The notes under the pieces: generated by a model | Seen by the model: the letters and a program-made list of their open reading frames with translations, nothing else | The model's database searches: none | Told to the model about the DNA's origin: nothing | Program-made: the position numbers and the translations under genes | Part shown: positions 35 through 63,427 of the stretch, one piece after another | How positions within the stretch are numbered: position 1 is the stretch's first letter | How the letters are laid out: each line of letters starts with the position of its first letter | IMG/VR virus record: IMGVR_UViG_3300044712_000810 | Coordinates: 186,001-250,000 of that record | DNA: 64,000 nt | Direction: 5' to 3' (one strand)

Positions 35-328
35 TCATACTAACTCAATAATATACTTTTGCATTTCAAGTCGCATGTCTTCATCAAACAAAACCTCCAA
101 AGCAGGATACATGTCACGGTGAAAATCAAAGAATGCTCGTGCATGTGGAATATAAACTCGATGTTTATATTTAATTTGATCACCAATACACACATATTCT
201 TTATTAAATCTATATTTGTATTTGATTTTAAATCGTTCAAATAATTCACGTCTTGATATTAATCTGTTGTCATATATTAACTCAACAAATATATTTATTA
301 ATTTACGATCATCTGCATTATCTGTCAT
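35..328 (-). CDS. Small paralog, family A (C-terminal DDD..L.MQKY..E.V motif)
   Basis: Ends FDEDMRLEMQKYIIELV; ATGA overlap with neighbours. Confidence 0.8.
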   Translation of the reverse strand: MTDNADDRKLINIFVELIYDNRLISRRELFERFKIKYKYRFNKEYVCIGDQIKYKHRVYIPHARAFFDFHRDMYPALEVLFDEDMRLEMQKYIIELV

Positions 329-606
329 ACTCGTTCAACCACATATTTCATCATATTAAGATACATATCATCATCCATAAGTGTTAATATTATATTAGAT
401 AAAGTTGGTGGATTTTGCATTTCAGTTCCACGTTCAATAACTTTATCATTATACTTGTATACTGTGACTTCACCAAGATCTTCTTCATCATAAACACTTC
501 GTTTAATTCCTAATGGAATAAATAGCTTTATATTAAAATACCCTGGTCTTTCTTTACTTCTAAAGAAATTCATATATGTAGTTAATAGTTGTTCTCTGTT
601 TGTCAT
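325..606 (-). CDS. Small paralog, family A
   Basis: LGI..YKYNDK core; ends MDDDMYLNMMKYVVERV. Confidence 0.8.
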   Translation of the reverse strand: MTNREQLLTTYMNFFRSKERPGYFNIKLFIPLGIKRSVYDEEDLGEVTVYKYNDKVIERGTEMQNPPTLSNIILTLMDDDMYLNMMKYVVERV

Positions 607-842
607 ATTAACTCCAGTAACAGTTTTTGATACTGAACTAACAAATCAGGATCTTTAAATGCCTTAACAATAGCAGATACATCTTCAATGGTTAGATGTT
701 TATTAACCATGCGATATTCATAATTGGAATCACGTTTATAAAATCTAACTTTACCAACTTTATATTTATACATATCCATTCTAATATTTAACGCATTAAT
801 AATCCAATACGACCAACCATCTAAATTTGTTTCAGGAGCCAT
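603..842 (-). CDS. Small paralog, family A-like
   Basis: Ends DPDLLVQYQKLLLELI; start uncertain. Confidence 0.7.
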   Translation of the reverse strand: MAPETNLDGWSYWIINALNIRMDMYKYKVGKVRFYKRDSNYEYRMVNKHLTIEDVSAIVKAFKDPDLLVQYQKLLLELI

Positions 843-1111
843 TTGTTGTACCTTATAGTTAGTTGTTCATCATCAAACTTACGTATTAGTATCCATAAGT
901 TATATAAGTCATTAGGAAATTGTCGTTTAATAACAATCTTACCATAGTGTTTAGTCCATGCATTATCGGATGGGCCGGAATATTTAAATTGATATTTAGT
1001 TACGACTTTTCTATGTAAGTCATACGTATCTACTGATTTGAATTCACTATATGTTATATTTAATTCAAACAAAATTTGTGACATTCGATGAAATGTAATA
1101 TGTTTATTCAT
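821..1111 (-). CDS. Small paralog, family A-like
   Basis: WTKHYGKIVI..FP shared with 13948..14205; ends NKWLLKQI. Confidence 0.8.
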   Translation of the reverse strand: MNKHITFHRMSQILFELNITYSEFKSVDTYDLHRKVVTKYQFKYSGPSDNAWTKHYGKIVIKRQFPNDLYNLWILIRKFDDEQLTIRYNKWLLKQI

Positions 1112-1359
1112 ACAAGTAACAACAATATTTTTTGATATTGAATTTTTAGATCAATATTATCAAATTCATTCACAATAGATTCAATATCTTCTAAACATGT
1201 TACATATTCTTTACGAATTACTTCTTTATTTTTAAATGAAAATTTATATCCATCATCAAAGTTATGATACATATGAGTTTTTATCTTTAACCCATCAAGT
1301 ATCATACGAAACCGTTTGGTTGAATAAAGAATCATTACCGATTTGCCAAGAAGGTTCAT
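1108..1359 (-). CDS. Small paralog, family A-like
   Basis: Ends DLKIQYQKILLLLV. Confidence 0.75.
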   Translation of the reverse strand: MNLLGKSVMILYSTKRFRMILDGLKIKTHMYHNFDDGYKFSFKNKEVIRKEYVTCLEDIESIVNEFDNIDLKIQYQKILLLLV

Positions 1360-1589
1360 ATAAGCTCCAGTAGAAGTCGTTGATATGCGATTGTTAGTTC
1401 TTCATCGTTGATAAATTCAACGATATCGGCAAGTCCATCAATAGTTACTGGGGCAGTACCCATGATACCAATGCGTTTACCTTTATAAAATATAGCAGAA
1501 GTCGGTGTGACTTTATCATTTTCATAAATTGTAGACATTTTGATATTATTATCACGAGTAAATTTAATAAGACAATCAAAAGGATTCAT
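1356..1589 (-). CDS. Small paralog, family A-like (first gene of array)
   Basis: Start reassigned to MNPFD at 1589 behind AGGAGG SD; ends QRLLLELI. Confidence 0.8.
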   Translation of the reverse strand: MNPFDCLIKFTRDNNIKMSTIYENDKVTPTSAIFYKGKRIGIMGTAPVTIDGLADIVEFINDEELTIAYQRLLLELI

Positions 1590-1614
1590 TTTATCCTCCT
1601 TAATACACCAAACT

Positions 1615-1624
1615 ATTTCTATAT
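1615..1624 (-). promoter_or_regulatory. Putative phage promoter motif ATATAGAAAT
   Basis: Exact copy of recurring intergenic motif upstream of array start. Confidence 0.6.
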
Positions 1625-1689
1625 GAAAAGTTATAAAACTAAAAAATGGGCTATACGAGATCTTAGCCCGTATAGCCCAATAAAAAAAC

Positions 1690-2112
1690 TTATTTTGGAT
1701 ATGTACTCTTAACAAAATCTACTTTTGCAATTAAGTCTTCCATATCTTTACCAATATTGATATTCTGTGATTTAAGTACTTTAAATCCTTTTATGATTGC
1801 ATCCAATTGTTCACCAAAGTATTCATATGAAATATTACGTAACTCTTGATAATTAGTTTTAATAAAATCTGGATCGGCAATAACTGGGACTGGATCCCCA
1901 ATCATAATATGATAACGTTCAGTTGTAATTGGTGGTATTGGTAAACCATGTTGTTTATCTATAACATCAACTATTGGCGTATCATATTTAAAGTTATCTG
2001 GAACCCATACAAGTTTGCTTCCATCTTCATAGAAGCTTAACATTTTTCTATCAATATTTTGACTGTCAGCATGAAATCCAATTATTTTATCATCTTTAAC
2101 AACTAGTAACAT
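1690..2112 (-). CDS. Hypothetical protein, possibly tail-fibre assembly/chaperone
   Basis: Directly downstream of collar genes; C-terminal R..Y..EQLDAI...VK..YPK pattern typical of such proteins. Confidence 0.5.
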   Translation of the reverse strand: MLLVVKDDKIIGFHADSQNIDRKMLSFYEDGSKLVWVPDNFKYDTPIVDVIDKQHGLPIPPITTERYHIMIGDPVPVIADPDFIKTNYQELRNISYEYFGEQLDAIIKGFKVLKSQNINIGKDMEDLIAKVDFVKSTYPK

Positions 2113-2123
2113 ATGTTATCTCC

Positions 2124-11387: not shown

Positions 11388-11687
11388 TCATAAATCCATA
11401 ATTAATTTTTTTTGCATTTCTAATAACATATCATCGTCATATAGATTTGATATGATTTCATATAAATGTATACTTTTAAAAACATCTGGCGTGTATTTAT
11501 TTGCGTCGATGTATTTTTTTCTATTTAAGTATGTGTATACTCGAAAATCACCCGTTATACAACATTTGATTTGTAAATCTTTGAACAGTTGCGATACATA
11601 ATAGTAACCAACTGCATTTTTAATACCATCCGTACTATATTTGTTAATAAATAGCATTATTAAATCAGTATGTTCTTCTGGTATCAT
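11388..11687 (-). CDS. Small paralog, family A
   Basis: Ends YDDDMLLEMQKKLIMDL. Confidence 0.8.
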   Translation of the reverse strand: MIPEEHTDLIMLFINKYSTDGIKNAVGYYYVSQLFKDLQIKCCITGDFRVYTYLNRKKYIDANKYTPDVFKSIHLYEIISNLYDDDMLLEMQKKLIMDL

Positions 11688-11977
11688 AACAACGCTATTA
11701 TAATCTTTTGTATTTTTAATCTTTGCGAATCAGTCAATCCAAACCTATTAACTACATCAACATACATTTGTCTCATACAACTATGATAACGACTTGATAT
11801 ATTATGAATATACTCACGATGATAATACATAAACTCATTTCCAAAATCTTTAGATATTATCATATTATATTCATTTAATATTGCGATTGTTACACTCACA
11901 TTTAATATTTGTTTAATTAAAGCCTCATCTCGAACAACATCACATAATGTTTCAACTAACTCGATGTCACTACTCAT
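11684..11977 (-). CDS. Small paralog, family A
   Basis: Start MSSDIEL at ATGA overlap; ends QKIIIALL. Confidence 0.75.
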   Translation of the reverse strand: MSSDIELVETLCDVVRDEALIKQILNVSVTIAILNEYNMIISKDFGNEFMYYHREYIHNISSRYHSCMRQMYVDVVNRFGLTDSQRLKIQKIIIALL

Positions 11978-12258
11978 ATTGCATGTTCCAGTATATATTT
12001 TTGTATTTTCACGCAAAGATCTTCATCCCAGAAATGATCAACAACTTTAACGAATATTTGTTCGTGTACATATGATTCGTATGTTTCATATGTTTTATTA
12101 TTATATTTGTATAAATAAGGTGCTTTTAGGTCGAAATCTTTATCAAGATTTTCAACACTTATGTTTAACACGTTATATGGAGCAATAGCAGTTTCTGGTT
12201 CTACTACTATCCAAAATTCATGTATTAACTTTTCTTCTAACTTATTAACATTGTTCAT
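11974..12258 (-). CDS. Small paralog, family A
   Basis: Ends WDEDLCVKIQKYILEHAI. Confidence 0.8.
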   Translation of the reverse strand: MNNVNKLEEKLIHEFWIVVEPETAIAPYNVLNISVENLDKDFDLKAPYLYKYNNKTYETYESYVHEQIFVKVVDHFWDEDLCVKIQKYILEHAI

Positions 12259-12536
12259 ATTATGTGTTCCAGTACATACTTGTTTAATGCGGTTACTAGA
12301 TCTTCGTCGTACAAAGCACGAAAGACAAATACGAATGTTGAGAATCCACTAATTTGTAATGTGGATGGTAATTCATATGTTTTATCACCATGCACGAATA
12401 ATACTTGTGCATTTTCTGTAACATTAAATGTTATTCCTAACTTTTCATACATGTTTGATACTACGAATGTTCTATGTGACCAGAAGATCTTCAACAAATC
12501 CATTTCTTCATCAGACAATGGTGTTAATTTGCTCAT
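12255..12536 (-). CDS. Small paralog, family A
   Basis: Ends YDEDLVTALNKYVLEHII. Confidence 0.8.
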   Translation of the reverse strand: MSKLTPLSDEEMDLLKIFWSHRTFVVSNMYEKLGITFNVTENAQVLFVHGDKTYELPSTLQISGFSTFVFVFRALYDEDLVTALNKYVLEHII

Positions 12537-12784
12537 ATGTGTTCTACCACAAACTTCTGCATTCTAAGCATCATGTCATCATCCATCATTTCACAAATAA
12601 CATCAACCCATTGTCCATGCTCATATATTTCACCTTTATAGTGTACTCCAAAATTAGGTAAGTCCTCATCACATTCAATCTCGATATTAAGTAAATTTAG
12701 AAGTGCAGTATATCGAAAATCATATACTTTTTTAAATGTATTATAAAATAATATGGCAAACTTTCTACGTTCTAATGGAGTCAT
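12533..12784 (-). CDS. Small paralog, family A
   Basis: Ends MDDDMMLRMQKFVVEHI. Confidence 0.8.
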   Translation of the reverse strand: MTPLERRKFAILFYNTFKKVYDFRYTALLNLLNIEIECDEDLPNFGVHYKGEIYEHGQWVDVICEMMDDDMMLRMQKFVVEHI

Positions 12785-13002
12785 ATGTCAATAATTAATG
12801 CTTTAATAAGTTTTTCTCGAAGTTCATCATCAACAAGTTGTGATAATACTGTTTTCCACATTCCATGTTTTGCCATTTTATCTTTATAAAATACATATTC
12901 ATTATTATTAGACAATTCAGGTATACGTGAATATAAATCAGTATCAGGTCTTTTAAGTGCATAAAATTCATCAATTAGTTCAAACAACTCATTATCGGTC
13001 AT
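12781..13002 (-). CDS. Small paralog, family A
   Basis: Ends DDELREKLIKALIIDI; close duplicate of 12999..13217. Confidence 0.8.
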   Translation of the reverse strand: MTDNELFELIDEFYALKRPDTDLYSRIPELSNNNEYVFYKDKMAKHGMWKTVLSQLVDDELREKLIKALIIDI

Positions 13003-13217
13003 ATGTGTACTATTGCTACTTTTATAAGTTTTTCACGCAATTCATCATCAATAATTTCAGGCAAGATATCTTGCCACCAACCATGTTGTACCTTCTTACC
13101 TTTATATTCAACCCCATCACCGTGTTCTATTAATTCAGGTATATGATCATAAAGACAAAATGGTATAGGTTTATGATAAAATGAATCTATAAGTTTACAT
13201 AGTTCGTGATCTGTCAT
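12999..13217 (-). CDS. Small paralog, family A
   Basis: Ends DDELREKLIKVAIVHI. Confidence 0.8.
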   Translation of the reverse strand: MTDHELCKLIDSFYHKPIPFCLYDHIPELIEHGDGVEYKGKKVQHGWWQDILPEIIDDELREKLIKVAIVHI

Positions 13218-13485
13218 GTTTTACCTTCTGTTTACGTACTTCACGTTCAAACTGAACTATCTCAGTCATCTTTTGACGTATGTTGTCGTCTAAGATCTTA
13301 TTAAATAATATAAACCAGAAATGATCTATGCGTTCAAGTATAAAATCTCGTATGTTTGTAGTTTTATCTTTATAAGATATATTATAATTTCCATTATCTG
13401 TAATGCCAAAATATGTATAATAATTAATTTTACCATTAGTGTATAATAGAAATTCACTTATAAGTTTACGTTTACTTAATTTCAT
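13195..13485 (-). CDS. Small paralog, family A (aberrant C-terminus)
   Basis: FGI..YKDK core and LDDNIR present, but basic tail replaces the terminal motif. Confidence 0.7.
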   Translation of the reverse strand: MKLSKRKLISEFLLYTNGKINYYTYFGITDNGNYNISYKDKTTNIRDFILERIDHFWFILFNKILDDNIRQKMTEIVQFEREVRKQKVKHDRSRTM

Positions 13486-13766
13486 AGTGCTTGTATTAAA
13501 CACTTTTGAATGTTAAGTGCCATGTCTTCATCGAAAAATTGCGATAGTATTTCAAAATGATAATCACTCATTGGTTTACTATCTAATAATTCATTTGTAT
13601 CCAAAATAGTCCGACCTTTATATCCATATTCTCGACAATCACGAATGGTATTAGGATCATAATGAATTCCTATTTCACGAAAAGCATCGGTCCAAGTATG
13701 CCATATATTACCATTATAAATTATATCTAGAAATGTCCTTAATATATCTGCATCATGATGTGTCAT
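13482..13766 (-). CDS. Small paralog, family A
   Basis: Ends FDEDMALNIQKCLIQAL. Confidence 0.8.
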   Translation of the reverse strand: MTHHDADILRTFLDIIYNGNIWHTWTDAFREIGIHYDPNTIRDCREYGYKGRTILDTNELLDSKPMSDYHFEILSQFFDEDMALNIQKCLIQAL

Positions 13767-13951
13767 ACTCGCTCCAATAACCACTTGTTTAAGTTATTAG
13801 TCACATCAGGATCATTAATTTCTAATACTACTTTACATAAAACATCTACAGGAACATAAACATTATGTGATTGACTTATAATATCCGATTCTAAATAACT
13901 TACACCAAAACGATGTAATAGTATTCTTAAATGATGGACATTTGTACTCAT
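13763..13951 (-). CDS. Small paralog, family A-like
   Basis: Ends DPDVTNNLNKWLLERV. Confidence 0.7.
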   Translation of the reverse strand: MSTNVHHLRILLHRFGVSYLESDIISQSHNVYVPVDVLCKVVLEINDPDVTNNLNKWLLERV

Positions 13952-14205
13952 ATTCGTTCCAGTAAATACTTTTGATATGTTATGATGACTTGTGGATCTT
14001 CAAACTTATATAATAACTCCATAAAATCTTCTTTAGTTTCAGGAAACCCATCTATAATTATCTTACCATAATGATTGGTCCACCATTCTTCTGATTGTCC
14101 ACAATATCTAAATGCACATTTTCTTTTATTTCCAACATATCCATCAAGTCTAGTGACTCTTATTTCAGAACCACGTATATGATTTACTAATTCATAATAA
14201 GTCAT
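13948..14205 (-). CDS. Small paralog, family A-like
   Basis: WTNHYGKIII..FP; ends YQKYLLERI. Confidence 0.8.
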   Translation of the reverse strand: MTYYELVNHIRGSEIRVTRLDGYVGNKRKCAFRYCGQSEEWWTNHYGKIIIDGFPETKEDFMELLYKFEDPQVIITYQKYLLERI

Positions 14206-14453
14206 ACATGCTCCACTAAGTATTTTTGTATATTGAGTTTAAGATCCTCGTCCATAAGTTTTAAAATACTTTCACAAATATTACCTGTTCGCTTTTGATG
14301 TATATATGATTTATTATTAAATCGTAATAACCATCCATATGGCAATGATTCATCTTCAATTCCTATAACTTCAAATATACTTTTAGTAGGATCATCATTA
14401 GTATTAAATACATTCCAATATGTATATATTAAATCACGATATTCTTGATTCAT
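14202..14453 (-). CDS. Small paralog, family A
   Basis: Ends MDEDLKLNIQKYLVEHV. Confidence 0.8.
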   Translation of the reverse strand: MNQEYRDLIYTYWNVFNTNDDPTKSIFEVIGIEDESLPYGWLLRFNNKSYIHQKRTGNICESILKLMDEDLKLNIQKYLVEHV

Positions 14454-14698
14454 ATTACATGATCCAATAACCATTTTTGCATTTTGCTTCTAATATCATC
14501 ATCCATTAACATCATAAATGCATCGGACCATAATACAACTGAAGTTCGTTCTAAGTCCCATTGTGAGTAATCATATTCTTTATTTTTATATCGCATTTTA
14601 TATTTACTACTTGCGTCTATTTTGAAATACTTTAAAAATGAACAGGTATCATATGCTTCTTCAATAAACCATTTAACAAGTTCTTCATCCGAACTCAT
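14450..14698 (-). CDS. Small paralog, family A
   Basis: Ends MDDDIRSKMQKWLLDHVI. Confidence 0.8.
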   Translation of the reverse strand: MSSDEELVKWFIEEAYDTCSFLKYFKIDASSKYKMRYKNKEYDYSQWDLERTSVVLWSDAFMMLMDDDIRSKMQKWLLDHVI

Positions 14699-14949
14699 AA
14701 GTGCTCCAGTAAGTATTTTTGCATTGCCAGCCGAAGATCTTCATCCATGAATTGAATTATGACACTATGTATTGAATTAGGCCATATCCAATCGTATTTT
14801 TTATTCTTATAAATAAGATACTTATCCAAATCGTCGATATATTCCATACCGTTCTTATAAGTGTGTACTTCTATTCCGAACTCATCAAGTGTAGTAATAA
14901 ATTCAACACTATCCCAAAATAGATCTATTAATGTTTCATCGGCGTTCAT
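14695..14949 (-). CDS. Small paralog, family A
   Basis: Ends MDEDLRLAMQKYLLEHL. Confidence 0.8.
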   Translation of the reverse strand: MNADETLIDLFWDSVEFITTLDEFGIEVHTYKNGMEYIDDLDKYLIYKNKKYDWIWPNSIHSVIIQFMDEDLRLAMQKYLLEHL

Positions 14950-15242
14950 ATGAATTCCAACATAAACTTCTGTATCTTGACGAGCATGTCAACATCCATT
15001 ATTTGCATTATGATTCGTGTAAGATGATTTTTAGTCCAAGAAGAAAAGTTTTTCTTCATATGCACTTCATACATCTTATCATTGTATAAAACAAATCGTC
15101 TATTCCCGGATGGATTGCATTTGTATTGCAATCCTAAGTGTCTAAACACTCTATCGGGCAGTAATGATGTTTCTTTTTTATCACGTAACTTAATAATATA
15201 AGAATTCACTAAGTCTCTAGTGATTAACTTCTCTTGTTTCAC
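14946..15242 (-). CDS. Small paralog, family A
   Basis: GTG start behind AGGAG; ends MDVDMLVKIQKFMLEFI. Confidence 0.8.
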   Translation of the reverse strand: MKQEKLITRDLVNSYIIKLRDKKETSLLPDRVFRHLGLQYKCNPSGNRRFVLYNDKMYEVHMKKNFSSWTKNHLTRIIMQIMDVDMLVKIQKFMLEFI

Positions 15243-15273: not shown

Positions 15274-15283
15274 ATTTCTATAT
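15274..15283 (-). promoter_or_regulatory. Putative phage promoter motif ATATAGAAAT
   Basis: Between terminator hairpin (15304-15329) and next sub-array. Confidence 0.6.
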
Positions 15284-15331: not shown

Positions 15332-15634
15332 TTAAAGTCTTTTTAATACTATTTTTTGTAAGTTTATTCTCATGTCGTCATCATATAACGTTTGAAGAAT
15401 ATACTTTATATCTCTAAATTGAAGTGACATTGATGGTGTCTTCAATACCTTGTTTTTATATTTAATTTTTGTTGACATTTTATCAACTGATGCGAACTTA
15501 AAACCAAAATCATTAATTAATAAATGTAATATATCAGCTATATTATATTGTGTAACATGTTTAAAGAATTGATCAATTAAGAAATCCTTTTCATCCATAT
15601 CAACTAAGTCACCATCTAGATCTAATTCCATCAT
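15332..15634 (-). CDS. Small paralog, family A
   Basis: Ends YDDDMRINLQKIVLKRL. Confidence 0.8.
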   Translation of the reverse strand: MMELDLDGDLVDMDEKDFLIDQFFKHVTQYNIADILHLLINDFGFKFASVDKMSTKIKYKNKVLKTPSMSLQFRDIKYILQTLYDDDMRINLQKIVLKRL

Positions 15635-15867
15635 ATGCGATCCAATATGTATTTCATCATTTTAAGTTTCATATCATCATCATAAAAGTAACATAATATT
15701 CTATATAATGGTACATCATATAAAGTCTTTACCTTTACAGTAAATTGTTTATCTTTATATTTATATTTAATATACTGATTTGACATTTGAACATGTGTAA
15801 TATCCAAATGATAAAATATATCTTTGCCTACTGATAAATATGTTTTGACTAATATAGTATCAATCAT
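15631..15867 (-). CDS. Small paralog, family A
   Basis: Ends YDDDMKLKMMKYILDRI. Confidence 0.8.
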   Translation of the reverse strand: MIDTILVKTYLSVGKDIFYHLDITHVQMSNQYIKYKYKDKQFTVKVKTLYDVPLYRILCYFYDDDMKLKMMKYILDRI

Positions 15868-16118
15868 ACATACTCCAATAAGTATTTTTGCATTTTAAGT
15901 GTCATGTCATCATCGACAAGCGATTCAATTGTACTCCAGAAAGCATTGATTAATACCTTCTTATGAAACTCTTTATACTCTATTTCAAATATCATTGGTT
16001 GTCCCATCATATTATGTCGTTTAACACTAATACCTAACATGCTAAGTATAGTTAAATCATTATGTATGTATTTAGACATTACATTAAAACATGTGTTTAA
16101 TAATGTTTCATCATTCAT
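15864..16118 (-). CDS. Small paralog, family A
   Basis: Ends VDDDMTLKMQKYLLEYV. Confidence 0.8.
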   Translation of the reverse strand: MNDETLLNTCFNVMSKYIHNDLTILSMLGISVKRHNMMGQPMIFEIEYKEFHKKVLINAFWSTIESLVDDDMTLKMQKYLLEYV

Positions 16119-16363
16119 ATGCGTTCCACCAATAGTTTAAGCATTTTAATCCTTATATCTTCGTCCATAAATTGTTTTAGTACATGTGACCAATAACCAT
16201 ATCGGTCATTATCAGTAATAGGATCAATGATATATTCCTGATCTTTATAATATATTGCTTCGTAATTAAGTTGTTCATAATATGTAAGTCCAAAGTATTC
16301 ATAATACTTTACTGGGCCGAAGGTCTCTTCAAGAAACCATTCGATAAGTTTATCATCGGTCAT
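16115..16363 (-). CDS. Small paralog, family A
   Basis: Ends MDEDIRIKMLKLLVERI. Confidence 0.8.
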   Translation of the reverse strand: MTDDKLIEWFLEETFGPVKYYEYFGLTYYEQLNYEAIYYKDQEYIIDPITDNDRYGYWSHVLKQFMDEDIRIKMLKLLVERI

Positions 16364-17795: not shown

Positions 17796-17813
17796 GTATG
17801 GTTCCCAAACCCG

Positions 17814-47069: not shown

Positions 47070-47563
47070 GAGAAATTTATGAAACTGCAACAGATGTTTA
47101 TTTTCCTAATGGATTTGATGCAAGAGATCATAATTTTATGGTATTTATTGAACAACAATATAAAGATTATTGGAATAAATATTATAAAAAACGAATGACT
47201 CCAAGTGCTAAAGAAATTAAAAAACGCACAGAAGAGTTAAATGAACGAGAAACCATATTAACGATTAAAGAACAAGAATTTAAAGATCGTATAAGAAATA
47301 AAGAAGATGACATTCGAGACATTAGTAGAGATTTAAAAGGTAAAGAAATTGCAATTCATCATAAGATGGAATTAGCAGATAAAAGATTAAAACAAATTGC
47401 TGAATCGAATGAAAAAATAATCCCAGAACTTGTATTTGAAATGGATCCTACAGTAATTCAAGAAAAATTAAGTAGGATCAATATGACATTTCTTGATTGT
47501 ATGTTAAATCATATGGACGATCTTAAAGCATTAATACAAAAAGAAATGTTACGGAGGATATAA
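47015..47563 (+). CDS. Coiled-coil protein, family C
   Basis: Ends HMDDLKALIQKEMLRRI. Confidence 0.75.
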   Translation: MARPRKDRSTERDDEPDIREIYETATDVYFPNGFDARDHNFMVFIEQQYKDYWNKYYKKRMTPSAKEIKKRTEELNERETILTIKEQEFKDRIRNKEDDIRDISRDLKGKEIAIHHKMELADKRLKQIAESNEKIIPELVFEMDPTVIQEKLSRINMTFLDCMLNHMDDLKALIQKEMLRRI

Positions 47564-48106
47564 ATGCCAAAAAAAACCAGTCTTTTCGACGATGATGATT
47601 CGCCACTTGTTGCATATTCTAAATTAAGTAAAGGTAAACGAACATATAGACATGAATTCGTCGACTTATCAAAATGTAATCGTAAACAATTTAGAGAAAT
47701 AATCAAAGACATTAATGAATTTTATGAAGATAAATATTCAAAATTAATGACACCAACGGTAAGTCGTCTTCGAAGAGAACAACAGGCATTACGTGATCAA
47801 GTTAAAGCAATAACTGCCAGACATTTTGCATTAGATGAAAAAGAAAAAAGACTTAAAGAAAGAGAAAACAGAGAAATTGAAAATAAAAAAATATTTCTTC
47901 ATAAACGTGAAACTGAAATAGAACATAGAGAAAAAACACTTAAAGATATAAATATAAGAGTATGTGAAAAAATAGTATTTGAATTGAATGAAAAATATAT
48001 AACCGACACAATTTCCGGCATTAATATAACATTTCTTTGTTGTATGCCTGATCATTTAGATCGAATCAAAGAATTAATTCAACGTGAACTACTCAACCGA
48101 GTCTAG
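47564..48106 (+). CDS. Coiled-coil protein, family C
   Basis: Ends HLDRIKELIQRELLNRV. Confidence 0.75.
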   Translation: MPKKTSLFDDDDSPLVAYSKLSKGKRTYRHEFVDLSKCNRKQFREIIKDINEFYEDKYSKLMTPTVSRLRREQQALRDQVKAITARHFALDEKEKRLKERENREIENKKIFLHKRETEIEHREKTLKDINIRVCEKIVFELNEKYITDTISGINITFLCCMPDHLDRIKELIQRELLNRV

Positions 48107-48115
48107 GAGGATCAA

Positions 48116-48451
48116 ATGCACCAACAGTACATCGATCAACATGCAGATTATGTGAAATTTGCAAATGCACAAAAACTGGCATGGAATAAAAATGCCATGA
48201 TTAAAACAAAACTGCATGAGATTTTTGAACTCATGCGTGATATTCCACAACATATCCAGACAATGGGTGTTCATAATGACAAACTCGATAAAGAGTTTGA
48301 TGAAGCAATCAAAACTGCAATTTTCACAGTCGATCCTGTGGAGATTGAACAAAAGTTCAATCGTATGAGTTCTCCTATGCTTCATGGTATTCTTGAACAT
48401 ATGGATGATGTGAAAGCAATCGCACAAAAAGTATTATTGGGACGCGTATAA
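48116..48451 (+). CDS. Coiled-coil protein, family C
   Basis: Ends HMDDVKAIAQKVLLGRV. Confidence 0.75.
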   Translation: MHQQYIDQHADYVKFANAQKLAWNKNAMIKTKLHEIFELMRDIPQHIQTMGVHNDKLDKEFDEAIKTAIFTVDPVEIEQKFNRMSSPMLHGILEHMDDVKAIAQKVLLGRV

Positions 48452-48768
48452 TGAAACCAGAAGATATGGTATATATAACGGAGGAGGAAAAACGCCTCAA
48501 GATAGATGCTACAGATAGAATAACAGAGATTGATAATCTGCATAAAACTTATGCAGTATTATTTGAGCAAATGAATGAAATCAATCAAAAAATTAAACAA
48601 ATTCAAAGATTGATGCAAGAAAAGCTCACCGAAGTCATTTTTACATTGGATATGACTGAAATTGATAATAAACTTGAGAAACTTGATGTACAAGTTCTCG
48701 GTCTTATGGCTGCTCACATTGACGGGGTGAAAATTCTCATCCAGAAGAAAATGACTGAAAAAGTCTAG
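48451..48768 (+). CDS. Coiled-coil protein, family C
   Basis: Ends HIDGVKILIQKKMTEKV. Confidence 0.75.
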   Translation: MKPEDMVYITEEEKRLKIDATDRITEIDNLHKTYAVLFEQMNEINQKIKQIQRLMQEKLTEVIFTLDMTEIDNKLEKLDVQVLGLMAAHIDGVKILIQKKMTEKV

Positions 48769-50378: not shown

Positions 50379-50588
50379 TTAAATATCTTCTATAAGTCGA
50401 CGTAAATGTCGCTCTCTATATTTAATCAATTCATTTTTATGCATTCTGCAAAATTCATTATATAAAAAGTTTGGAGTACATGTTATATTCTCAAACATAT
50501 AATCTATTGTTTTTTCTTGAATTGTTAAACGAGTTTTAACTATATTCATCATATCGTTATAAATTTCATCAAAGTCATCATAGTCCAT
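50379..50588 (-). CDS. Small protein with shared C-terminal tag
   Basis: Ends HLRRLIEDI; resembles 50589..50780. Confidence 0.65.
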   Translation of the reverse strand: MDYDDFDEIYNDMMNIVKTRLTIQEKTIDYMFENITCTPNFLYNEFCRMHKNELIKYRERHLRRLIEDI

Positions 50589-50780
50589 TTAAATCTCACT
50601 AATTAATTCTTTTTGTAAATCATCTTTGATTTCACATATAACATCATACGATTCTTTACATAACATATTATATATGTATGCATCAGATTTTACAACTTCA
50701 CCTTTTCTACTTTCAGTTATAACTAACTTAAGTAATTGAACAGTTTCCATTGCTATTGGGTGAAAATTATCATGTTCCAT
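50589..50780 (-). CDS. Small protein with shared C-terminal tag
   Basis: Ends DDLQKELISEI. Confidence 0.65.
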   Translation of the reverse strand: MEHDNFHPIAMETVQLLKLVITESRKGEVVKSDAYIYNMLCKESYDVICEIKDDLQKELISEI

Positions 50781-52627: not shown

Positions 52628-54025
52628 ATGGACAACATCATACTTACTGATTTTAGCATGAACCACGAGACTATCACACTACCACAAGAAAAATTCAAGT
52701 ATCAAGAACCTGATCAAGAAATTTTATTAAAAGATTGTGAATTTAGATTACACCCATCATATATCTCTATAAGAAGAAATAAAGAAGTACATTATCCACA
52801 ATATTGGACATATTCTAATAAAAATATATCAGAAACGCATCATCTTATATTGATGATGGAACCTGATAATAATAAAATGGTTATAATTTTTCGAGAAATT
52901 AAAGATGATATTGATTCTATTCCATATTTTGAAGGTAATTATAATTACATGTATGAACGTGGGGCAAATAAAGATAATGTTTTAAGACAACAATGTGTAA
53001 ACTTATTAAATTCTTTATATTTATATTATTTAAATAATGAAGCTACGTTTCCAGTAAAATTTAAAACATACACTTCAAGATTTAATATTTTATACAATCA
53101 ATTGTATCGTTTTGCGTCGATGGAAATGTTAACCACCGAAGATTTTATATATAAACTTAAAAATGTTAAGTTTTTTCGTAAATTATTACCTATATTAGAT
53201 CAAAAATGTGATGATATTATCAAAGTTATTGAAAATGATCCCACTGGTAAGAAAAAATTACCAATTTTAAGTTTCTTTGGATGTTTTGGTAAACTTCAAG
53301 AACTTAGAGATCACCCAAGATTAGGTAAATATTTTAAAGATGATGACAAAGTGTATTTATATAAAACAATATTGCCTGTTCCGCATCTTGCAATGTATTG
53401 TAAAAAATGCAAACAAGTTAATGCTGGATGGAAACCAACAATTAAAAATGGTTATGAAGTTTGTAAGCGTGCATTTTCAAATCAGTTTGATGAATATCAT
53501 TTAGATTATATTAGAAAAACTTCAGGTTTTACAAAATTAGAAATGGATTATAATTTAAAACATGAAAATTGTCTTTATAATAGTAAAAAAGCTCACTGTA
53601 AACATAGACGTATAATTAAAACAAAACTTAGAACGTCAACTTTTCCACATGCCAGAGTTTTTACAATGAAATTTCTACTTGACGTTTACAATAATAAAAG
53701 AGCAGTTTACAGAGCTAAAACTAAAAATAATGGAGTTCCATATACTTTTAGAGAAATTAATAAAAACATTTTAACAATTCCAATGGCAAGCGCTAGTTAT
53801 TTAAATGACATATTTAACACAAAAGAAAAATGGAAACTTAACATATATCTAAACGATGAACGTTTTAATCGCAGTCTAAAATATTATAATGATAAAAAAG
53901 CATTATTTTTTAATAAAAATGGTACTGCATTAAAGATTATTGAAAATTTAGAGCTTATTAAAAACGAAAAAGTTCGTAAAAAAGCTAAATGGATATTTTT
54001 AAAAGTTGCCATAGAAAATTTGTAG
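52628..54025 (+). CDS. Large basic hypothetical protein with shared C-terminal tag
   Basis: 465 aa, CKKC; ends IFLKVAIENL. Confidence 0.7.
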   Translation: MDNIILTDFSMNHETITLPQEKFKYQEPDQEILLKDCEFRLHPSYISIRRNKEVHYPQYWTYSNKNISETHHLILMMEPDNNKMVIIFREIKDDIDSIPYFEGNYNYMYERGANKDNVLRQQCVNLLNSLYLYYLNNEATFPVKFKTYTSRFNILYNQLYRFASMEMLTTEDFIYKLKNVKFFRKLLPILDQKCDDIIKVIENDPTGKKKLPILSFFGCFGKLQELRDHPRLGKYFKDDDKVYLYKTILPVPHLAMYCKKCKQVNAGWKPTIKNGYEVCKRAFSNQFDEYHLDYIRKTSGFTKLEMDYNLKHENCLYNSKKAHCKHRRIIKTKLRTSTFPHARVFTMKFLLDVYNNKRAVYRAKTKNNGVPYTFREINKNILTIPMASASYLNDIFNTKEKWKLNIYLNDERFNRSLKYYNDKKALFFNKNGTALKIIENLELIKNEKVRKKAKWIFLKVAIENL

Positions 54026-61208: not shown

Positions 61209-61463
61209 ATGAAGCCAACAAAAGGTAACGCGATTAGAGGTTATAATTCTAATTCTATAATAATTGATGATGCAGGATTTAATGTTAGTGGTAATGTTCA
61301 CATGTGGGGCAGTACAATAATAAATAATCCACTATTACCACTTAAAGAAACAATAATTGAAGCAATTAAAAGTTGCACAGATACTTCTGAAATTAATGAT
61401 GTTTTATCTTCACTTGATGAAATACGAGAACTATTACTTAAACAAGGAATTAAAGAACTATGA
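61209..61463 (+). CDS. Small protein with shared C-terminal tag
   Basis: Ends IKSC.DT.EI..VL...LLLKQGIKEL; paralog of next gene. Confidence 0.65.
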   Translation: MKPTKGNAIRGYNSNSIIIDDAGFNVSGNVHMWGSTIINNPLLPLKETIIEAIKSCTDTSEINDVLSSLDEIRELLLKQGIKEL

Positions 61464-61753
61464 GTTGGTCCGCACAAGGTATACGAATTCTTCCACCTAA
61501 TTCATTTCCACAAAATGCCAATGAAGGCGATGTGTGTTATGATGATAATACTGGTGAAATGAAAATTTTTATATCTGGACACTGGTTACAATTTACTAGT
61601 AATAATCGAACAGAAATACGAAAAATAAAATTAATGCAACGATTATTAGAATGTATAAAAGATTGTGATGATACAAAGGAAATAGTTGAAGTTCTTGATA
61701 ACTTTGAATGGTTAAAAGAAGTTATAATTAAACAAGGAATTAAAGAATTATGA
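61460..61753 (+). CDS. Small protein with shared C-terminal tag
   Basis: Ends IKDC.DT.EI..VL...IIKQGIKEL. Confidence 0.7.
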   Translation: MSWSAQGIRILPPNSFPQNANEGDVCYDDNTGEMKIFISGHWLQFTSNNRTEIRKIKLMQRLLECIKDCDDTKEIVEVLDNFEWLKEVIIKQGIKEL

Positions 61754-61950
61754 TAAATGTAAATAAAAAGAAAGCAGTCGTGTTGTTAGGTACTTTACTT
61801 AACATGATGACAAAACATGAAGATAAAAAACTTAAAGTAACACAAATGTATGTCGAGCAAAAACTTGATGACATTATTGAGTGTTTAGTAAATGAAGCAG
61901 TCGAAAGAATCAATTTAAAATCACAAAACAGCCAAAATTCGAATAATTAA
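61750..61950 (+). CDS. Hypothetical protein
   Basis: ATGA overlap. Confidence 0.55.
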   Translation: MINVNKKKAVVLLGTLLNMMTKHEDKKLKVTQMYVEQKLDDIIECLVNEAVERINLKSQNSQNSNN

Positions 61951-61957
61951 AAAAATC

Positions 61958-61967
61958 ATATAGAAAT
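61958..61967 (+). promoter_or_regulatory. Putative phage promoter motif ATATAGAAAT
   Basis: Upstream of 62032 gene. Confidence 0.6.
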
Positions 61968-62031
61968 TATACTAGCACTGATATTTTTCTTGTAAACTTG
62001 TAATTTTTTATTAAACCTGTCGGAGGACAAA

Positions 62032-62448
62032 ATGGCTGAAATGATTTTTGACCCTGTTCTTGGTAAAGAAGCTGAATGCATTAAGAAAGGCACCAACTCC
62101 AAGGGCGATCAAGTTTGGATGAACAAAGAAACCAAAAAGCGTTTTTCCCAAACCCAGTCAGACGATGCAAAGAAGGCCGCAAAGCCTGGTAAGGCAAAGC
62201 CCAAAACCCAAACTCGTCCTACTACCGCCGCTGCTACTACTCCTGCAGCAAAGAAAGTTGTAAAGAGTCTTATTTACGTCAACAACCAATGTGTCAAAAC
62301 CATCGACGGCAAAGAAGTTAGTAAAGAACAAGCATTTGAACTTATCAAAGAAAACTTCCGCGAAGTCGCACTTCAGAATGCTGAAGTTACAATGAAGAAT
62401 GGTGAAACCAAGATTTATTTCACCATCATGACCGGAAACAAAGGTTAA
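62032..62448 (+). CDS. Protein with possible C-terminal ubiquitin-like domain (PRTRC protein C-like)
   Basis: K/A/P/T linker then ~60-aa domain ending IYFTIMTGNKG; GGAGG SD. Confidence 0.5.
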   Translation: MAEMIFDPVLGKEAECIKKGTNSKGDQVWMNKETKKRFSQTQSDDAKKAAKPGKAKPKTQTRPTTAAATTPAAKKVVKSLIYVNNQCVKTIDGKEVSKEQAFELIKENFREVALQNAEVTMKNGETKIYFTIMTGNKG

Positions 62449-62455
62449 TCTAATA

Positions 62456-62482
62456 GGGGGAGGGATTCCCTCCCCCACTTTT
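62456..62482 (+). terminator. Hairpin after Ubl-like gene
   Basis: GGGGGAGGG-ATT-CCCTCCCCC then ACTTTT. Confidence 0.55.
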
Positions 62483-62493
62483 GGAAGGATAAA

Positions 62494-63102
62494 ATGATAA
62501 GATCATACAAAAAAACGTTAACAATTACAGCGGATGAAATTCCAATTGAATGTTATCCTTCATTACAATTTAAATTAGATTCACCACGTGATGGTCATTC
62601 AGTTAAAATATATAATGAAACTTGGAGTTATTTAATGTCGATGAAAGTTGCAAAAGAATTTATAGAAAAATATAAAGATTCTATCAAATATGTCAACTTA
62701 CAACGACTTATTATTTTTATTAAAAATGAAATTGTTGGTGTACAAACTCAAATTCGACTGTCACCTTATGATTTTAAATATCCTAAAAAAACCATAACAA
62801 CAAGTTATGGTAGAGAATATGTTACAGATGATTATTCAAAAAATCCTCATAGAACTCGTGTTTTACCAATAAATGAAGAAATTGAAATATTATGGGATTA
62901 CTACCGCGTAACAAATAAAGTTGCAGAGTATGAAGAAATCGATTTTACCTTCAAAAATATATATTACTTCATTAAGTTTTTGAAAAAATATAAACAAGAA
63001 TTATTTGAAGCTATTATAATGGATAAAACACATTATCGTACTCTAGTTATTATGAAAACTCAAGAGGAACAAAATGCCAATAGAATTCTTACCAATATGT
63101 GA
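62494..63102 (+). CDS. Hypothetical protein
   Basis: AAGGA SD; 202 aa. Confidence 0.65.
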   Translation: MIRSYKKTLTITADEIPIECYPSLQFKLDSPRDGHSVKIYNETWSYLMSMKVAKEFIEKYKDSIKYVNLQRLIIFIKNEIVGVQTQIRLSPYDFKYPKKTITTSYGREYVTDDYSKNPHRTRVLPINEEIEILWDYYRVTNKVAEYEEIDFTFKNIYYFIKFLKKYKQELFEAIIMDKTHYRTLVIMKTQEEQNANRILTNM

Positions 63103-63427
63103 CGAACCTGTAAAAAATGATCATGATCATAGTTTTTATGGTCCATTAAAAAATCATGCTACTTGTAAAAATATACGAATAAATGATTATGAATTCCTTA
63201 CAAGAAATTCAGAAAATGTTAATATCACTCCTGAAAATGCATTAAAAAAACTTAATACCCATATTGAAAAAATGGAAACTAAGTTTTTGATGTTTTCACA
63301 GTTTGATATTAGTACAGATTATTGGTATCATTCTAGGCACTCTAAACAAAGAATTTATCTTGATCCACGGGACGGTGCATTTTGGAAAGAAAAACTAAAT
63401 TTGAAGTCAACTTTACTCAGTTTATAA
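63074..63427 (+). CDS. Hypothetical protein with shared C-terminal tag
   Basis: GAGG SD; ends NLKSTLLSL. Confidence 0.6.
   Translation: MPIEFLPICDEPVKNDHDHSFYGPLKNHATCKNIRINDYEFLTRNSENVNITPENALKKLNTHIEKMETKFLMFSQFDISTDYWYHSRHSKQRIYLDPRDGAFWKEKLNLKSTLLSL

What the first reader, a model, noticed from the sequence alone, without database searches (positions are those of the whole stretch)
35..63427. One C-terminal tag shared by about 55 otherwise unrelated phage proteins
Seen: about 55 ORFs of 57-465 aa, on both strands and from several unrelated families, end with [K/R]-x-x-hydrophobic-x-x-hydrophobic-COOH. The basic residue sits at -7 (at -8 in three cases) and is often preceded by an acidic helix start (DDD/DED). 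Examples: QKYLLEHI (17529), IKALIIDI (12781), LKLQLEFV (23684), IKMTLNLL (25359), TKHLIREI (43784), MKVCLENI (45048), QKEMLRRV (45970), QKELISEI (50589), LKVAIENL (52628), LKQGIKEL (61209, 61460), LKSTLLSL (63074). Tail, radical SAM, YqeY, SLOG and family B proteins lack it. It also occurs on genes that end an operon (11388, 15332, 25359, 50379, 52628), so stop/start coupling does not explain it. Inference: a terminal amphipathic helix used as an address or docking signal (capsid loading/ejection, import into a phage compartment, binding to a hub, or a degron), so that many variable effector heads share one handle. I do not know of a described system like this.
Basis: partly seen in the sequence, partly recalled or inferred. 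Interest (0 to 1): 0.88.

Follow-up and report, generated by a model that had tools for sequence, protein, structure and literature searches.

The report
Shared C-terminal helix on 91 phage proteins
In one uncultured 315-kb soil phage, about one gene in six (91 genes, 52 of them in this window) ends in the same 15-residue helix placed exactly at the protein's end; selection keeps it at the protein level on heads with no detectable similarity to one another, so it is most likely a common docking or recognition handle, and I found no description of anything like it in phages.

Summary
The window is part of a complete 314,837-bp jumbo-phage genome from a rhizosphere metagenome.

**The tag**
- 91 ORFs (52 in the window) end with [DE][DE]-φ-x-φ-x-φ-Q-K-φ-φ-φ-E-x-φ-COOH.
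- In a six-frame scan every strong match stops 0-1 residue before a stop codon, and none is internal.
- Shuffled proteins give 8.7±2.8 loose matches against 88 observed. A related 285-kb AT-rich phage has none.
- Synonymous sites in the tag are fully randomised, so the peptide is what selection keeps.
- The downstream gene's Shine-Dalgarno site and the ATGA overlap only bias codon choice. Thirteen carriers at operon ends keep the tag.

- 43 carriers (33 in the window) are one very divergent small-protein family.
- The other 48 fall into at least six groups that share nothing detectable beyond the last ~15 residues.
- One carrier is a DUF7448 protein whose 119 nearest homologs elsewhere all lack the tag.

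**Interpretation**
- The best reading is a portable C-terminal recognition helix bound by a common partner (hub, unfoldase or protease). This is inferred, not shown.
- Rivals are self-association or a structural role, and a degron.
- A phage nucleus, sliding clamp, microcompartment shell and membrane anchor found no support.

The parts
35..1715 (-). Array of six core-family genes, all tagged: 35-328, 325-606, 603-842, 821-1111, 1108-1359, 1356-1715. The true start of the last gene is probably the internal ATG (MNPFD...).
   Evidence: Matrix scores 21-40. Aligned with the core family. Tested by leave-one-out HMM.
11388..15242 (-). Array of 14 tagged core-family genes: 11388-11687, 11684-12016, 11974-12258, 12255-12536, 12533-12784, 12781-13002, 12999-13217, 13482-13784, 13763-13951, 13948-14205, 14202-14474, 14450-14698, 14695-14949, 14946-15242. 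It also holds one decayed member, 13195-13503. The last gene of the array, 11388, is followed by a terminator hairpin.
   Evidence: The predicted structure of 14695-14949 has pLDDT 86 and pTM 0.73, and the tag is helix 70-83.
15332..19059 (-). Array of 13 tagged core-family genes: 15332-15634, 15631-15867, 15864-16118, 16115-16363, 16360-16647, 16644-16946, 16943-17206, 17206-17532, 17529-17795, 17814-18116, 18106-18387, 18389-18718, 18718-19059. The last gene, 15332, is followed by a terminator hairpin.
23684..25793 (+). Six tagged genes outside the core family (136, 57, 94, 171, 102 and 144 aa), ATGA-coupled. The last one is followed by a terminator hairpin.
   Evidence: Matrix scores 12-25. 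Not hit by the tag-less core HMM. No similarity to other groups once the tag is removed. No Pfam or PHROG match.
44354..44755 (-). Single tagged gene (133 aa as called), ending ...DDIYIDILKSEIVDL.
   Evidence: Score 14.6. Followed by no nearby gene.
44808..45566 (+). Tagged 252-aa protein ending ...LSLDLMKVCLENI.
   Evidence: Score 15.8. No Pfam or PHROG match.
45970..48768 (+). Six tagged paralogs, probably coiled-coil by their charged, repeat-like sequences: 45970-46647, 46647-47069, 47015-47563, 47564-48106, 48116-48451, 48451-48768. They end ...HMDD[IL]K.[IL]IQKEMLRR[IV].
   Evidence: Five of the six form their own family in iterated searches, and the six were treated as one positional group. 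Scores 15-27. Sequences.
50379..50780 (-). Two small tagged genes, 50589-50780 (63 aa) and 50379-50588 (69 aa). The second is followed by a terminator hairpin.
   Evidence: Scores 19.7 and 14.1. Terminator.
52628..54025 (+). 465-aa protein with a weak tag (...KWIFLKVAIENL). This is the least certain carrier.
   Evidence: Score 12.4. No family match.
61209..61753 (+). Two tagged paralogs, 61209-61463 and 61460-61753, ending ...LKQGIKEL.
   Evidence: Scores 18.5 and 14.5. They pair with each other by BLASTP.
43784..44107 (-). Borderline case ending ...LATELMTKHLIREI. It fits the minimal 10-residue pattern but falls below threshold.
   Evidence: 18-residue matrix score -3.9. 10-residue matrix score 5.4, the second-highest score among non-carriers.
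13195..13503 (-). Core-family member whose tag is degenerate (DDNIRQKMTEIVQFE) and is followed by 17 more residues. It is a natural example of a decayed tag.
   Evidence: Hit by the tag-less core HMM, E 0.0015. Sequence.
15275..15283 (-). One of the promoter-like motifs (TTTCATATAGAAATA core) that head tagged arrays. Other copies in the window lie near 1624(-), 23666(+), 44744(-) and 44783(+).
   Evidence: That it is a promoter, and of the early or middle class, is inference.

Best explanation
The last ~15 residues form a portable, selected C-terminal recognition helix. In the core family it extends to ~25 residues as a helix, acidic cap and helix hairpin.

**Defining features of the tag**
- A hydrophobic last residue (I, L or V) sitting exactly at the chain end.
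- Hydrophobic residues at -4, -5 and -9.
- A nearly invariant Lys at -7, usually preceded by Gln at -8.

**Proposed function**
- It serves as a common handle by which about 90 small, fast-evolving accessory proteins of this phage are bound by one shared partner.
- These proteins are probably expressed early or in the middle of infection.
- The partner could be a hub or scaffold, or a chaperone or unfoldase. The variable heads would do the different jobs.

**How it spread**
- New carriers arise by tandem duplication and divergence inside translationally coupled arrays.
- Occasionally an unrelated gene is fused to a tag-bearing 3' end. The DUF7448 protein is the example.

**Shown and inferred**
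- Shown: the motif, its exact terminal anchoring, peptide-level selection, its presence on non-homologous heads, and its restriction to this lineage.
- Inferred: that a partner exists, and the timing of expression.
- Unknown: the partner's identity. Untested candidates are the phage's own TPR protein at genome 162062-162886 and its AAA ATPase at 293680-295359, or a host factor.
For: **Discreteness and anchoring**
- 91 matches, all 0-1 residue from a stop codon, none internal.
- 88 of 91 end at exactly the same register. The three exceptions add a single Ile.
- Such exact termination across many families is what recognition of a chain end predicts. A structural helix gives no reason for it.

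**Selection on the peptide**
- Codon homozygosity at identical residues is 0.54, against 0.58 expected from genome codon usage.
- Conservative K-to-R changes use unrelated codons.
- The residue profile is the same in ATGA-coupled and uncoupled genes. Thirteen carriers at operon ends keep the tag.

**Different heads**
- In the 48 non-core carriers, conservation stops at about -15.
- A 10-residue matrix trained only on the non-core carriers recognises the core family (median score 11.8). It recognises 0 of 432 other proteins of this genome, and in a related phage 1 of 446 at a score of 6 or more and none at 8 or more.
- hhalign between seven groups aligns only the extreme C-termini, and finds nothing after 15 residues are trimmed.
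- The DUF7448 domain (E 2e-30) is complete at residue ~113 of 152. None of its 119 closest homologs (median 127 aa) has the tag.
- Its predicted structure is a beta domain followed by two helices, the last being the tag.

**Conserved polar residues**
- The conserved Q and K across unrelated contexts point to an outside partner rather than to packing within each protein.

**Kept in relatives**
- Copies on two small metagenome contigs are only 28-41% identical to any copy here, yet have intact tags.
Against: - No partner is identified. The phage encodes no recognisable PDZ, ClpP, Lon, clamp or microcompartment shell.
- In both predicted structures the tag helix follows another helix directly, at fairly high confidence and with no flexible linker. 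This fits an integral helical hairpin as well as it fits a free docking peptide.
- About 220 degrees of the helix surface is hydrophobic, so it may be buried within the protein or in a homo-oligomer.
- Nearly half of the carriers are one family, for which ordinary domain conservation suffices as an explanation.
- Profile methods can miss homology among 60-100-residue proteins this divergent, so a single ancient superfamily cannot be excluded for most groups.
- There are no expression, localisation or interaction data, and the phage is uncultured.
Confidence: 0.45

Rival explanations
1. Structural or self-association helix. The tag is the last helix of a small helical hairpin. It either completes each protein's own fold or drives homo- or hetero-oligomerisation among the tagged proteins, forming bundles or a condensate. 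No separate receptor exists.
For: - High-confidence helix-turn-helix at the C-terminus in both models, with no disordered linker.
- Very broad hydrophobic surface and only a modest hydrophobic moment.
- In the core family, conservation runs on into the preceding helix, to -25.
- Encapsulation peptides of microcompartments are reported to drive condensation (abstract of PMC12339742, listed; paper not read), which shows that sticky terminal helices can act this way.
Against: - A purely internal packing role does not explain why the same Q-K and the same exact chain end are kept on heads with different folds.
- It also does not explain why a DUF7448 domain that is complete without the tag in 119 homologs acquired it here.
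Confidence: 0.27
2. C-terminal degron. The tag marks a cohort of early accessory proteins for timed removal or unfolding by a host protease (ClpXP, Lon, tail-specific protease) or by the phage's own AAA ATPase.
For: - Strict dependence on the free C-terminus with a non-polar last residue, as in known C-terminal degrons (own knowledge: ssrA LAA-COOH, MuA RRKKAI-COOH).
- The phage encodes a classic-clade AAA ATPase (genome 293680-295359) that has no homolog in the tag-less relative.
- Carriers share a promoter-like motif with DNA and RNA metabolism genes, not with virion genes.
Against: - The motif is much longer and more specific than known degrons.
- There is no phage ClpP, Lon or PDZ protease.
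- The AAA link rests on a single comparison in a genome where 80% of genes lack a homolog in that relative.
Confidence: 0.13
3. One ancient superfamily. All 91 proteins descend from one small gene, only the C-terminal helix stays recognisable, and larger carriers are N-terminal fusions. On this view it is an unusually large lineage-specific expansion and nothing more.
For: - 43 carriers are demonstrably one family. In leave-one-out tests of the tag-less parts, 21 of 43 reach E<1e-3 and, judged against a ~10-bit cut-off (the highest shuffle score was 10.2), about 35 of 43 score above their shuffles.
- Carriers sit in tandem, translationally coupled arrays, and 59% have ATGA overlaps against 10% of other genes.
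- Large expansions of small proteins are known in jumbo phages: about 35 zinc ribbons in Bacillus phage G (PMC7824862).
Against: - No similarity outside the tag between groups, either by HMM or by profile-profile comparison.
- The DUF7448 head certainly has a separate origin.
- Even on this view, the part kept under selection is the terminal helix, which still needs a functional explanation.
Confidence: 0.1
4. Nucleotide-level or translational cause. The motif reflects the downstream gene's ribosome-binding region, a recombination or junction sequence, or a nascent-peptide effect on termination and re-initiation.
For: - GAG at -3 is used in 48% of Glu codons, against 13% genome-wide.
- CTG and TTG are enriched at -4, and NTA codons at -1 in ATGA overlaps. 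A Shine-Dalgarno site and a start codon are therefore written into the tag.
Against: - Synonymous sites are otherwise random.
- The residue profile is identical in 37 carriers without the overlap, and in 13 carriers with no downstream gene.
- The ATGA-coupled 'family B' array works without the tag.
Confidence: 0.03

Closest known systems
Encapsulation peptides of bacterial microcompartments
   Same: A terminal helix of 15-20 residues is found on otherwise unrelated proteins and acts as a common handle for one partner, the shell. It was recognised because encapsulated homologs carry an extension that free homologs lack (PMC4594438). The DUF7448 case here follows the same logic.
   Different: - These peptides lack sequence conservation, are clearly amphipathic, may sit at either terminus, and are joined by a poorly conserved linker.
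- Here the sequence is strongly conserved (about 24 bits), always at the exact C-terminus, only weakly amphipathic and without a linker.
- The phage has no shell gene.
Encapsulin cargo-loading peptides and the phage T4 capsid-targeting sequence (own knowledge)
   Same: Short terminal peptides load diverse cargo into an HK97-fold shell or a phage head.
   Different: - Encapsulin peptides are Gly-rich, extended, and found on one to a few cargos.
- The T4 signal is N-terminal and is cleaved off.
- Here about 90 carriers share a promoter-like motif with DNA and RNA metabolism genes rather than with virion genes.
C-terminal address or recognition tags read at the free carboxyl end: PTS1 (SKL-COOH) read by the PEX5 TPR domain, EEVD read by Hop, ssrA and MuA tails read by ClpX (own knowledge)
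   Same: Exact anchoring at the chain end, one reader for many unrelated clients, and the phage does encode a TPR protein and an AAA ATPase.
   Different: Those tags are 3-11 residues long and not helical, and no link between the phage TPR or AAA protein and the tag has been tested.
Lineage-specific expansions of small proteins in jumbo phages, such as the ~35 zinc ribbons of Bacillus phage G (PMC7824862)
   Same: Dozens of tandem small paralogs in the accessory part of a jumbo phage genome. This describes the 43-member core family well.
   Different: The conserved element here also sits on heads that are not homologous to the family, and it is confined to the last ~15 residues.
Families of RiPP precursors with one conserved leader and many variable cores, such as the prochlorosins (own knowledge)
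   Same: One constant recognition peptide joined to many hypervariable payloads in one genome, all read by one enzyme.
   Different: Carriers here are folded proteins of 56-465 residues, the constant part is C-terminal, and the radical SAM cluster in the window has its own Cys-rich candidate substrates.

Membership tests
Single paralogous protein family (lineage-specific expansion) | Members are homologous over their whole length, not only at the tag | tested here: not met
   - Met for the 43 core members: with the tag removed, 21 of 43 reach E<1e-3 in leave-one-out tests, and about 35 of 43 score above a ~10-bit cut-off, the highest shuffle score.
- Not met for the other 48. They are not hit by the tag-less core HMM.
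- hhalign probability is <=0.3% between all group pairs after trimming.
- The DUF7448 head is a separate family.
Microcompartment encapsulation peptide | 15-20 residue terminal helix that is clearly amphipathic | tested here: inconclusive
   A helix of the right length is predicted. The hydrophobic moment is 0.33±0.12 against 0.28±0.14 for other C-termini.
Microcompartment encapsulation peptide | Poorly conserved flexible linker between the domain and the peptide | tested here: not met
   No low-confidence segment precedes the tag in either model. pLDDT is 75 or more over the blocks leading into the tag helix (residues up to 150), and a second helix abuts the tag.
Microcompartment encapsulation peptide | Shell proteins (Pfam BMC domain) encoded alongside | tested here: not met
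   No PF00936 match in the complete genome. The control genomes did match.
Sliding-clamp binding motif (QL[SD]LF or QLxLxL at C-termini) | Consensus Q-L-x-L-x-[LF], and a clamp to bind | tested here: not met
   - The residue after Q is K or R in all 91, never L.
- No PF00712 match.
- The PF02916 search found nothing, but that model matched none of the control genomes either, so it is uninformative.
Phage-nucleus (chimallivirus) cargo | The phage encodes the nuclear shell protein chimallin, and usually the tubulin PhuZ | tested here: not met
   - No match to phiKZ gp054 at E<=1. This is a single-sequence search and therefore a weak negative.
- No tubulin domain.
T4-type capsid targeting sequence | N-terminal peptide removed by the prohead protease, on late-expressed genes | tested here: not met
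   The motif is at the C-terminus. The arrays share a promoter-like motif with topoisomerase, Ro60 and HD genes, and the motif is rare in the virion-gene region.
C-terminal degron (ssrA or MuA type) | Tag-dependent degradation by an AAA+ protease | not testable with these tools
   Only the non-polar free C-terminus is consistent with this. The phage has no ClpP or Lon, but it does have an AAA ATPase.
Membrane-targeting amphipathic helix (MinD or FtsA type) | Cationic, strongly amphipathic terminal helix | tested here: not met
   Net charge of the last 18 residues is about -1, the hydrophobic moment is modest, and no carrier has a transmembrane-like stretch.

The most novel reading that the evidence does not exclude
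A phage-encoded address code at proteome scale. One exact C-terminal helix (...φQKφφφExφ-COOH) is read by a single phage or host receptor, and it recruits about 90 interchangeable small effectors to one machine or compartment, or to timed destruction. That is about 17% of the phage's genes. New effectors would join simply by fusion to a tag-bearing 3' end. This would be a phage counterpart of PTS1 or of encapsulation peptides, and a natural plug-in system for accessory genes.
Probability: 0.4. Interest if true: 0.88.

Novelty: new variant of a known kind. Interest (0 to 1): 0.72.

Why it matters
Most small accessory genes of jumbo phages are orphans with no handle for study. Here about 90 of them declare a shared property that can be tested directly: one peptide, one presumed partner.

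- If the tag is a docking signal, a single pull-down with the peptide would identify a hub of host takeover or anti-defence activity. It would also define the whole client set at once.
- It would further give a short portable tag for directing proteins in infected cells.
- If the tag turns out to be a self-association or stability element, it would still be an unusually clear case. A 15-residue module is kept under selection while the rest of each protein has diverged beyond recognition, and an unrelated domain has picked it up.

Tried and rejected
1. **Composition artefact of an AT-rich genome.** Rejected by shuffles and by a 29% GC relative with only background frequency, 12 of 446.
2. **Shine-Dalgarno site or start overlap of the next gene.** This only biases codon choice. 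The tag persists without any downstream gene.
3. **DNA repeat, gene conversion or recombination junction.** Synonymous sites are random.
4. **An internal domain that merely tends to be C-terminal.** There is no internal copy in any frame.
5. **Known families.** No Pfam or PHROG match for 19 of the 20 carriers tested. No fold match for the core model in PDB or AlphaFold DB clusters, TM<0.5. The ESM Atlas gave no lead.
6. **Relatives.**
   - A word-index search with one member found only itself.
   - A profile search of 1.84 billion representatives found 29 copies from this genome plus 2 outside proteins, on contigs of 518 and 717 bp.
   - IMG/VR pattern and protein scans found no tagged relative.
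   - A JGI metagenome scan found none.
   - Five IMG/VR relatives whose RNA polymerase beta' is 45-52% identical have no tag, while the same search finds 59 in this genome.
   - ENA and JGI contigs found through beta' could not be searched as whole records. Their 22-kb flanks hold no tag.
7. **Candidate receptors encoded by the phage.** ClpP, Lon, PDZ, beta clamp, microcompartment shell, tubulin and chimallin were all absent; the search for the T4 clamp was uninformative because its control matched nothing.
8. **RiPP follower peptide for the window's radical SAM enzymes.** I judged this unlikely, because carriers are folded proteins and the cluster has its own Cys-rich ORFs.
9. **Function of DUF7448 by fold search.** Nothing informative.

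Full report
**What the window is.** The 64-kb window is bases 186,001-250,000 of a single-contig virus record of 314,837 bp with 33% G+C. The record has direct terminal repeats and is rated 100% complete. It was assembled from a rhizosphere metagenome. It is a jumbo phage with a split multisubunit RNA polymerase: beta' pieces lie at 56332-57264 and 58883-60847, and a beta subunit lies at genome 253600-255561. It also has a large terminase subunit, tail fibres and virion proteins at 60-130 kb, a topoisomerase II subunit and a Ro60/TROVE protein. No near relative is in the GenBank phage collection. Many uncultured phages have a beta' that is 45-54% identical.

- I called ORFs mechanically.
- Genome-wide it fits 88 of 516 ORFs. 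All but three lie between 160 and 313 kb. Shuffling whole proteins, or only their last 40 residues, gives 8.7±2.8.
- A position-weight matrix of the last 18 residues converges on φφ-D-[DE]-[DE]-φ-[KR]-φ-x-φ-Q-K-φ-φ-φ-E-x-φ-COOH.
- The strongest positions are Lys at -7 (3.35 bits; K or R in every carrier), Gln at -8, I/L/V at -4 and I/L/V at -1. The score distribution has two clean peaks.
- I scanned all six frames of the genome with the matrix, independently of any gene calls. It finds 91 windows scoring >=10, and every one ends 0 residues (88) or 1 residue (3) before a stop codon. The best internal window scores 15.
- Fifty-two carriers lie in the window.
- The three off-register cases add one Ile after the normal end.

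**Is it a nucleotide-level or coupling artefact?** No.
- Carriers are strongly associated with ATGA stop/start overlaps: 54 of 91, against 42 of 432 other genes.
- The downstream ribosome-binding site is visibly written into the tag. GAG supplies 48% of Glu codons at -3 against 13% genome-wide, CTG and TTG are enriched at -4, and NTA codons occupy -1.
- Apart from that, synonymous sites are random. Codon homozygosity at identical residues is 0.54 against 0.58 expected from codon usage.
- The residue profile is the same in the 37 carriers without the overlap.
- Thirteen carriers with no gene within 25 nt downstream keep full-strength tags, and several of them are followed by obvious terminator hairpins.
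- The neighbouring 'family B' array is ATGA-coupled without any tag.
- Selection therefore acts on the peptide.

**Are the carriers unrelated?** Half of them are not.
- The 43 small minus-strand genes at genome 182-205 kb align with a common plan (33 of them are in the window, at 35-1715 and 11388-19059). The plan is an N-terminal helix (L-[IV]-x-x-F), a second helix ending LGI or LNI, a Y-K-[NDG]-K hairpin, then the terminal helices.
- With the tag removed, a leave-one-out profile recovers 21 of 43 at E<1e-3. About 35 of 43 score above a ~10-bit cut-off, which was the highest shuffle score.
- A structure predicted from 25 paralogs is confident (pLDDT 86, pTM 0.73). It is alpha-alpha-beta-beta-beta-alpha-alpha, and the tag is the last helix, residues 70-83.
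- That fold has no match in the PDB or in AlphaFold DB clusters.
They are one very divergent lineage-specific expansion.

The other 48 carriers are different.
- The tag-less core profile hits none of them, and iterated searches link only small local families.
- Position-specific information, anchored at the C-terminus, falls to zero beyond about -15 in this set. In the core family it continues to -25.
- A 10-residue matrix trained only on these 48 recognises the core family (median score 11.8). It recognises none of the 432 remaining proteins of this genome, and in a related phage only 1 of 446 at a score of 6 or more and none at 8 or more.
- Profile-profile comparison of seven positional groups aligns only their extreme C-termini. 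After the last 15 residues are removed it finds nothing: probability <=0.3%, E>=0.2.

The clearest case is the 152-residue protein at genome 282551-283009.
- Residues 4-113 are a complete DUF7448 domain (E 2e-30), a family with more than 3,000 homologs.
- The 119 nearest homologs (47-62% identical, median 127 residues) end soon after the domain, and none has the tag.
- Its model is a confident beta domain followed by two helices, the second being the tag.
- The tag can therefore be added to a head of separate origin.

**Distribution.**
- A profile of the core family, searched against 1.84 billion representative proteins, found 29 copies from this genome and only two outside proteins.
- Those two lie on metagenome contigs of 518 and 717 bp. 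The contigs show the same tandem, overlapping arrangement, and each complete gene on them ends in an intact tag.
- The outside copies are only 28-41% identical to the nearest copy here.
- Five IMG/VR relatives have no match to a tag profile that finds 59 places in this genome. One of them is a 95%-complete genome of 285 kb.
- In that 285-kb genome the loose motif is at background (12 of 446).
- No carrier has a BLASTP hit in that genome. Genome 130-235 kb here is almost wholly without homologs there.
- The tag is therefore a young, lineage-restricted feature of the accessory genome.

**Context and timing (inference).**
- A motif, TTTAATATT-N8-9-TTTCATATAGAAATA, occurs 83 times, oriented towards downstream genes.
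- It heads tagged arrays, and it also precedes topoisomerase II, Ro60/TROVE, HD phosphohydrolase and ATPase genes.
- It is rare in the 60-130 kb region that holds the terminase, virion and tail genes.
- I read this as an early or middle promoter class. That argues against loading into capsids, which would call for late expression.

**What the tag is likely to do.** Four features point to recognition by something outside each protein:
- the exact register of the chain end in 88 of 91 proteins across many families;
- the restriction of the last residue to I, L or V;
- the invariant Lys and frequent Gln, which are polar residues kept in unrelated contexts;
- acquisition by a domain that is complete without it.

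I therefore favour a common docking or recognition handle (confidence about 0.45).

There are real counter-arguments.
- The helix is hydrophobic over about 220 degrees and only weakly amphipathic, with a moment of 0.33 against 0.28.
- In both models it abuts a preceding helix with no flexible linker.
- A role in self-association or in the fold is therefore a serious rival (about 0.27).
- A degron is possible (about 0.13). The phage lacks ClpP, Lon and PDZ proteins. It does encode a classic-clade AAA ATPase (293680-295359) and a soluble TPR protein (162062-162886), and neither has a homolog in the tag-less relative.
- That comparison carries little weight, because 80% of the genome lacks homologs in that relative.

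Several other readings found no support:
- a phage nucleus: no tubulin, and no chimallin by a single-sequence search;
- a sliding clamp: the consensus differs and no clamp was found;
- a microcompartment shell;
- a membrane anchor: net charge about -1 and no transmembrane-like stretch.

**Comparison with known systems.**
- In its logic the tag most resembles the encapsulation peptides of bacterial microcompartments. Those are terminal helices of 15-20 residues on unrelated enzymes, and they were recognised because free homologs lack the extension (PMC4594438).
- It also resembles chain-end address tags such as PTS1 or the ssrA tail (my own knowledge).
- It fails the membership tests for each of these: the sequence is strongly conserved, there is no linker, there is no shell, and it is longer than any degron.
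- The core family by itself is an ordinary, if very large, lineage-specific expansion of the kind noted for Bacillus phage G (PMC7824862).

**Caveats.**
- Gene calls and start codons are mine, and they are crude. Several first-start calls are too long, for example 1356-1715.
- The 18-residue matrix was trained on the set it scores. The cross-trained 10-residue matrix and the control genome address that circularity.
- The weakest carriers (scores 12-14, such as 52628-54025, 24261-24545 and 25359-25793) could include a chance match.
- Homology among proteins of 60-100 residues at this divergence can escape profile methods.

Noticed in passing
window 19676-22258 (-): Ten tandem ATGA-coupled genes of 72-97 aa ('family B'). 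They share a conserved N-terminus, MN.LE..V..LL, and end in [IV]-K-[IL]-stop. This is a second lineage-specific expansion, and it lacks the tag.
   Followed up: partly
window 5087-6337, 29465-36042, 36042-39941 (-): - Five paralogous radical SAM genes form one BLASTP cluster; Pfam on one of them (5087-6337) shows radical SAM plus SPASM domains. Two more radical SAM proteins follow.
- Cys-rich ORFs sit beside them: 29465-29968, with CHSNCHSNCHSDCHSN... repeats, and 34556-34816.
- Together this looks like a phage-borne peptide-modification (RiPP-type) cluster.
   Followed up: no
window 2124-5085 and 6883-11328 (-): Three tandem paralogs of about 320-335 aa; the one scanned (2124-3092) carries a tail-collar domain. 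Next to them are three tandem paralogs of 480-496 aa ending GKIKV[YW]KKY. They are probably a set of alternative receptor-binding proteins.
   Followed up: no
window 13195-13503 (-): A core-family member whose tag is degenerate and is read on for 17 more residues, overlapping the next gene by 23 nt. It may be a decaying copy, and it offers a natural comparison for what loss of the tag does.
   Followed up: partly
genome-wide; in the window near 1624(-), 6363(+), 15283(-), 23022(-), 23061(+), 23666(+), 44744(-), 44783(+), 49773(+), 50337(-), 61958(+): A promoter-like bipartite motif, TTTAATATT-N8-9-TTTCATATAGAAATA, has 83 copies oriented towards downstream genes. It is probably the recognition site of one of the phage's RNA polymerases.
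   Followed up: partly
outside the window: genome 162062-162886 (-) and 293680-295359 (+): A soluble TPR-repeat protein and a classic-clade AAA ATPase with a DUF7025 domain. Both are absent from the tag-less relative. They are untested candidates for a reader of the tag.
   Followed up: partly
window 12262-12567 (+) and 16271-16678 (+): Long antisense ORFs that a longest-ORF gene caller prefers over the real minus-strand genes 12255-12536, 16115-16363 and 16360-16647. Automatic annotation of this region may therefore miss three tagged genes.
   Followed up: yes
genome 253600-260286 compared with loci L009 and L012: In this phage, tagged genes fill the slots between conserved core genes: RNA polymerase beta, a ~400-aa protein conserved in the relatives, and DNA ligase. 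Relatives hold untagged, unrelated small ORFs in the same slots, so these slots look like sites of accessory-gene turnover.
   Followed up: no
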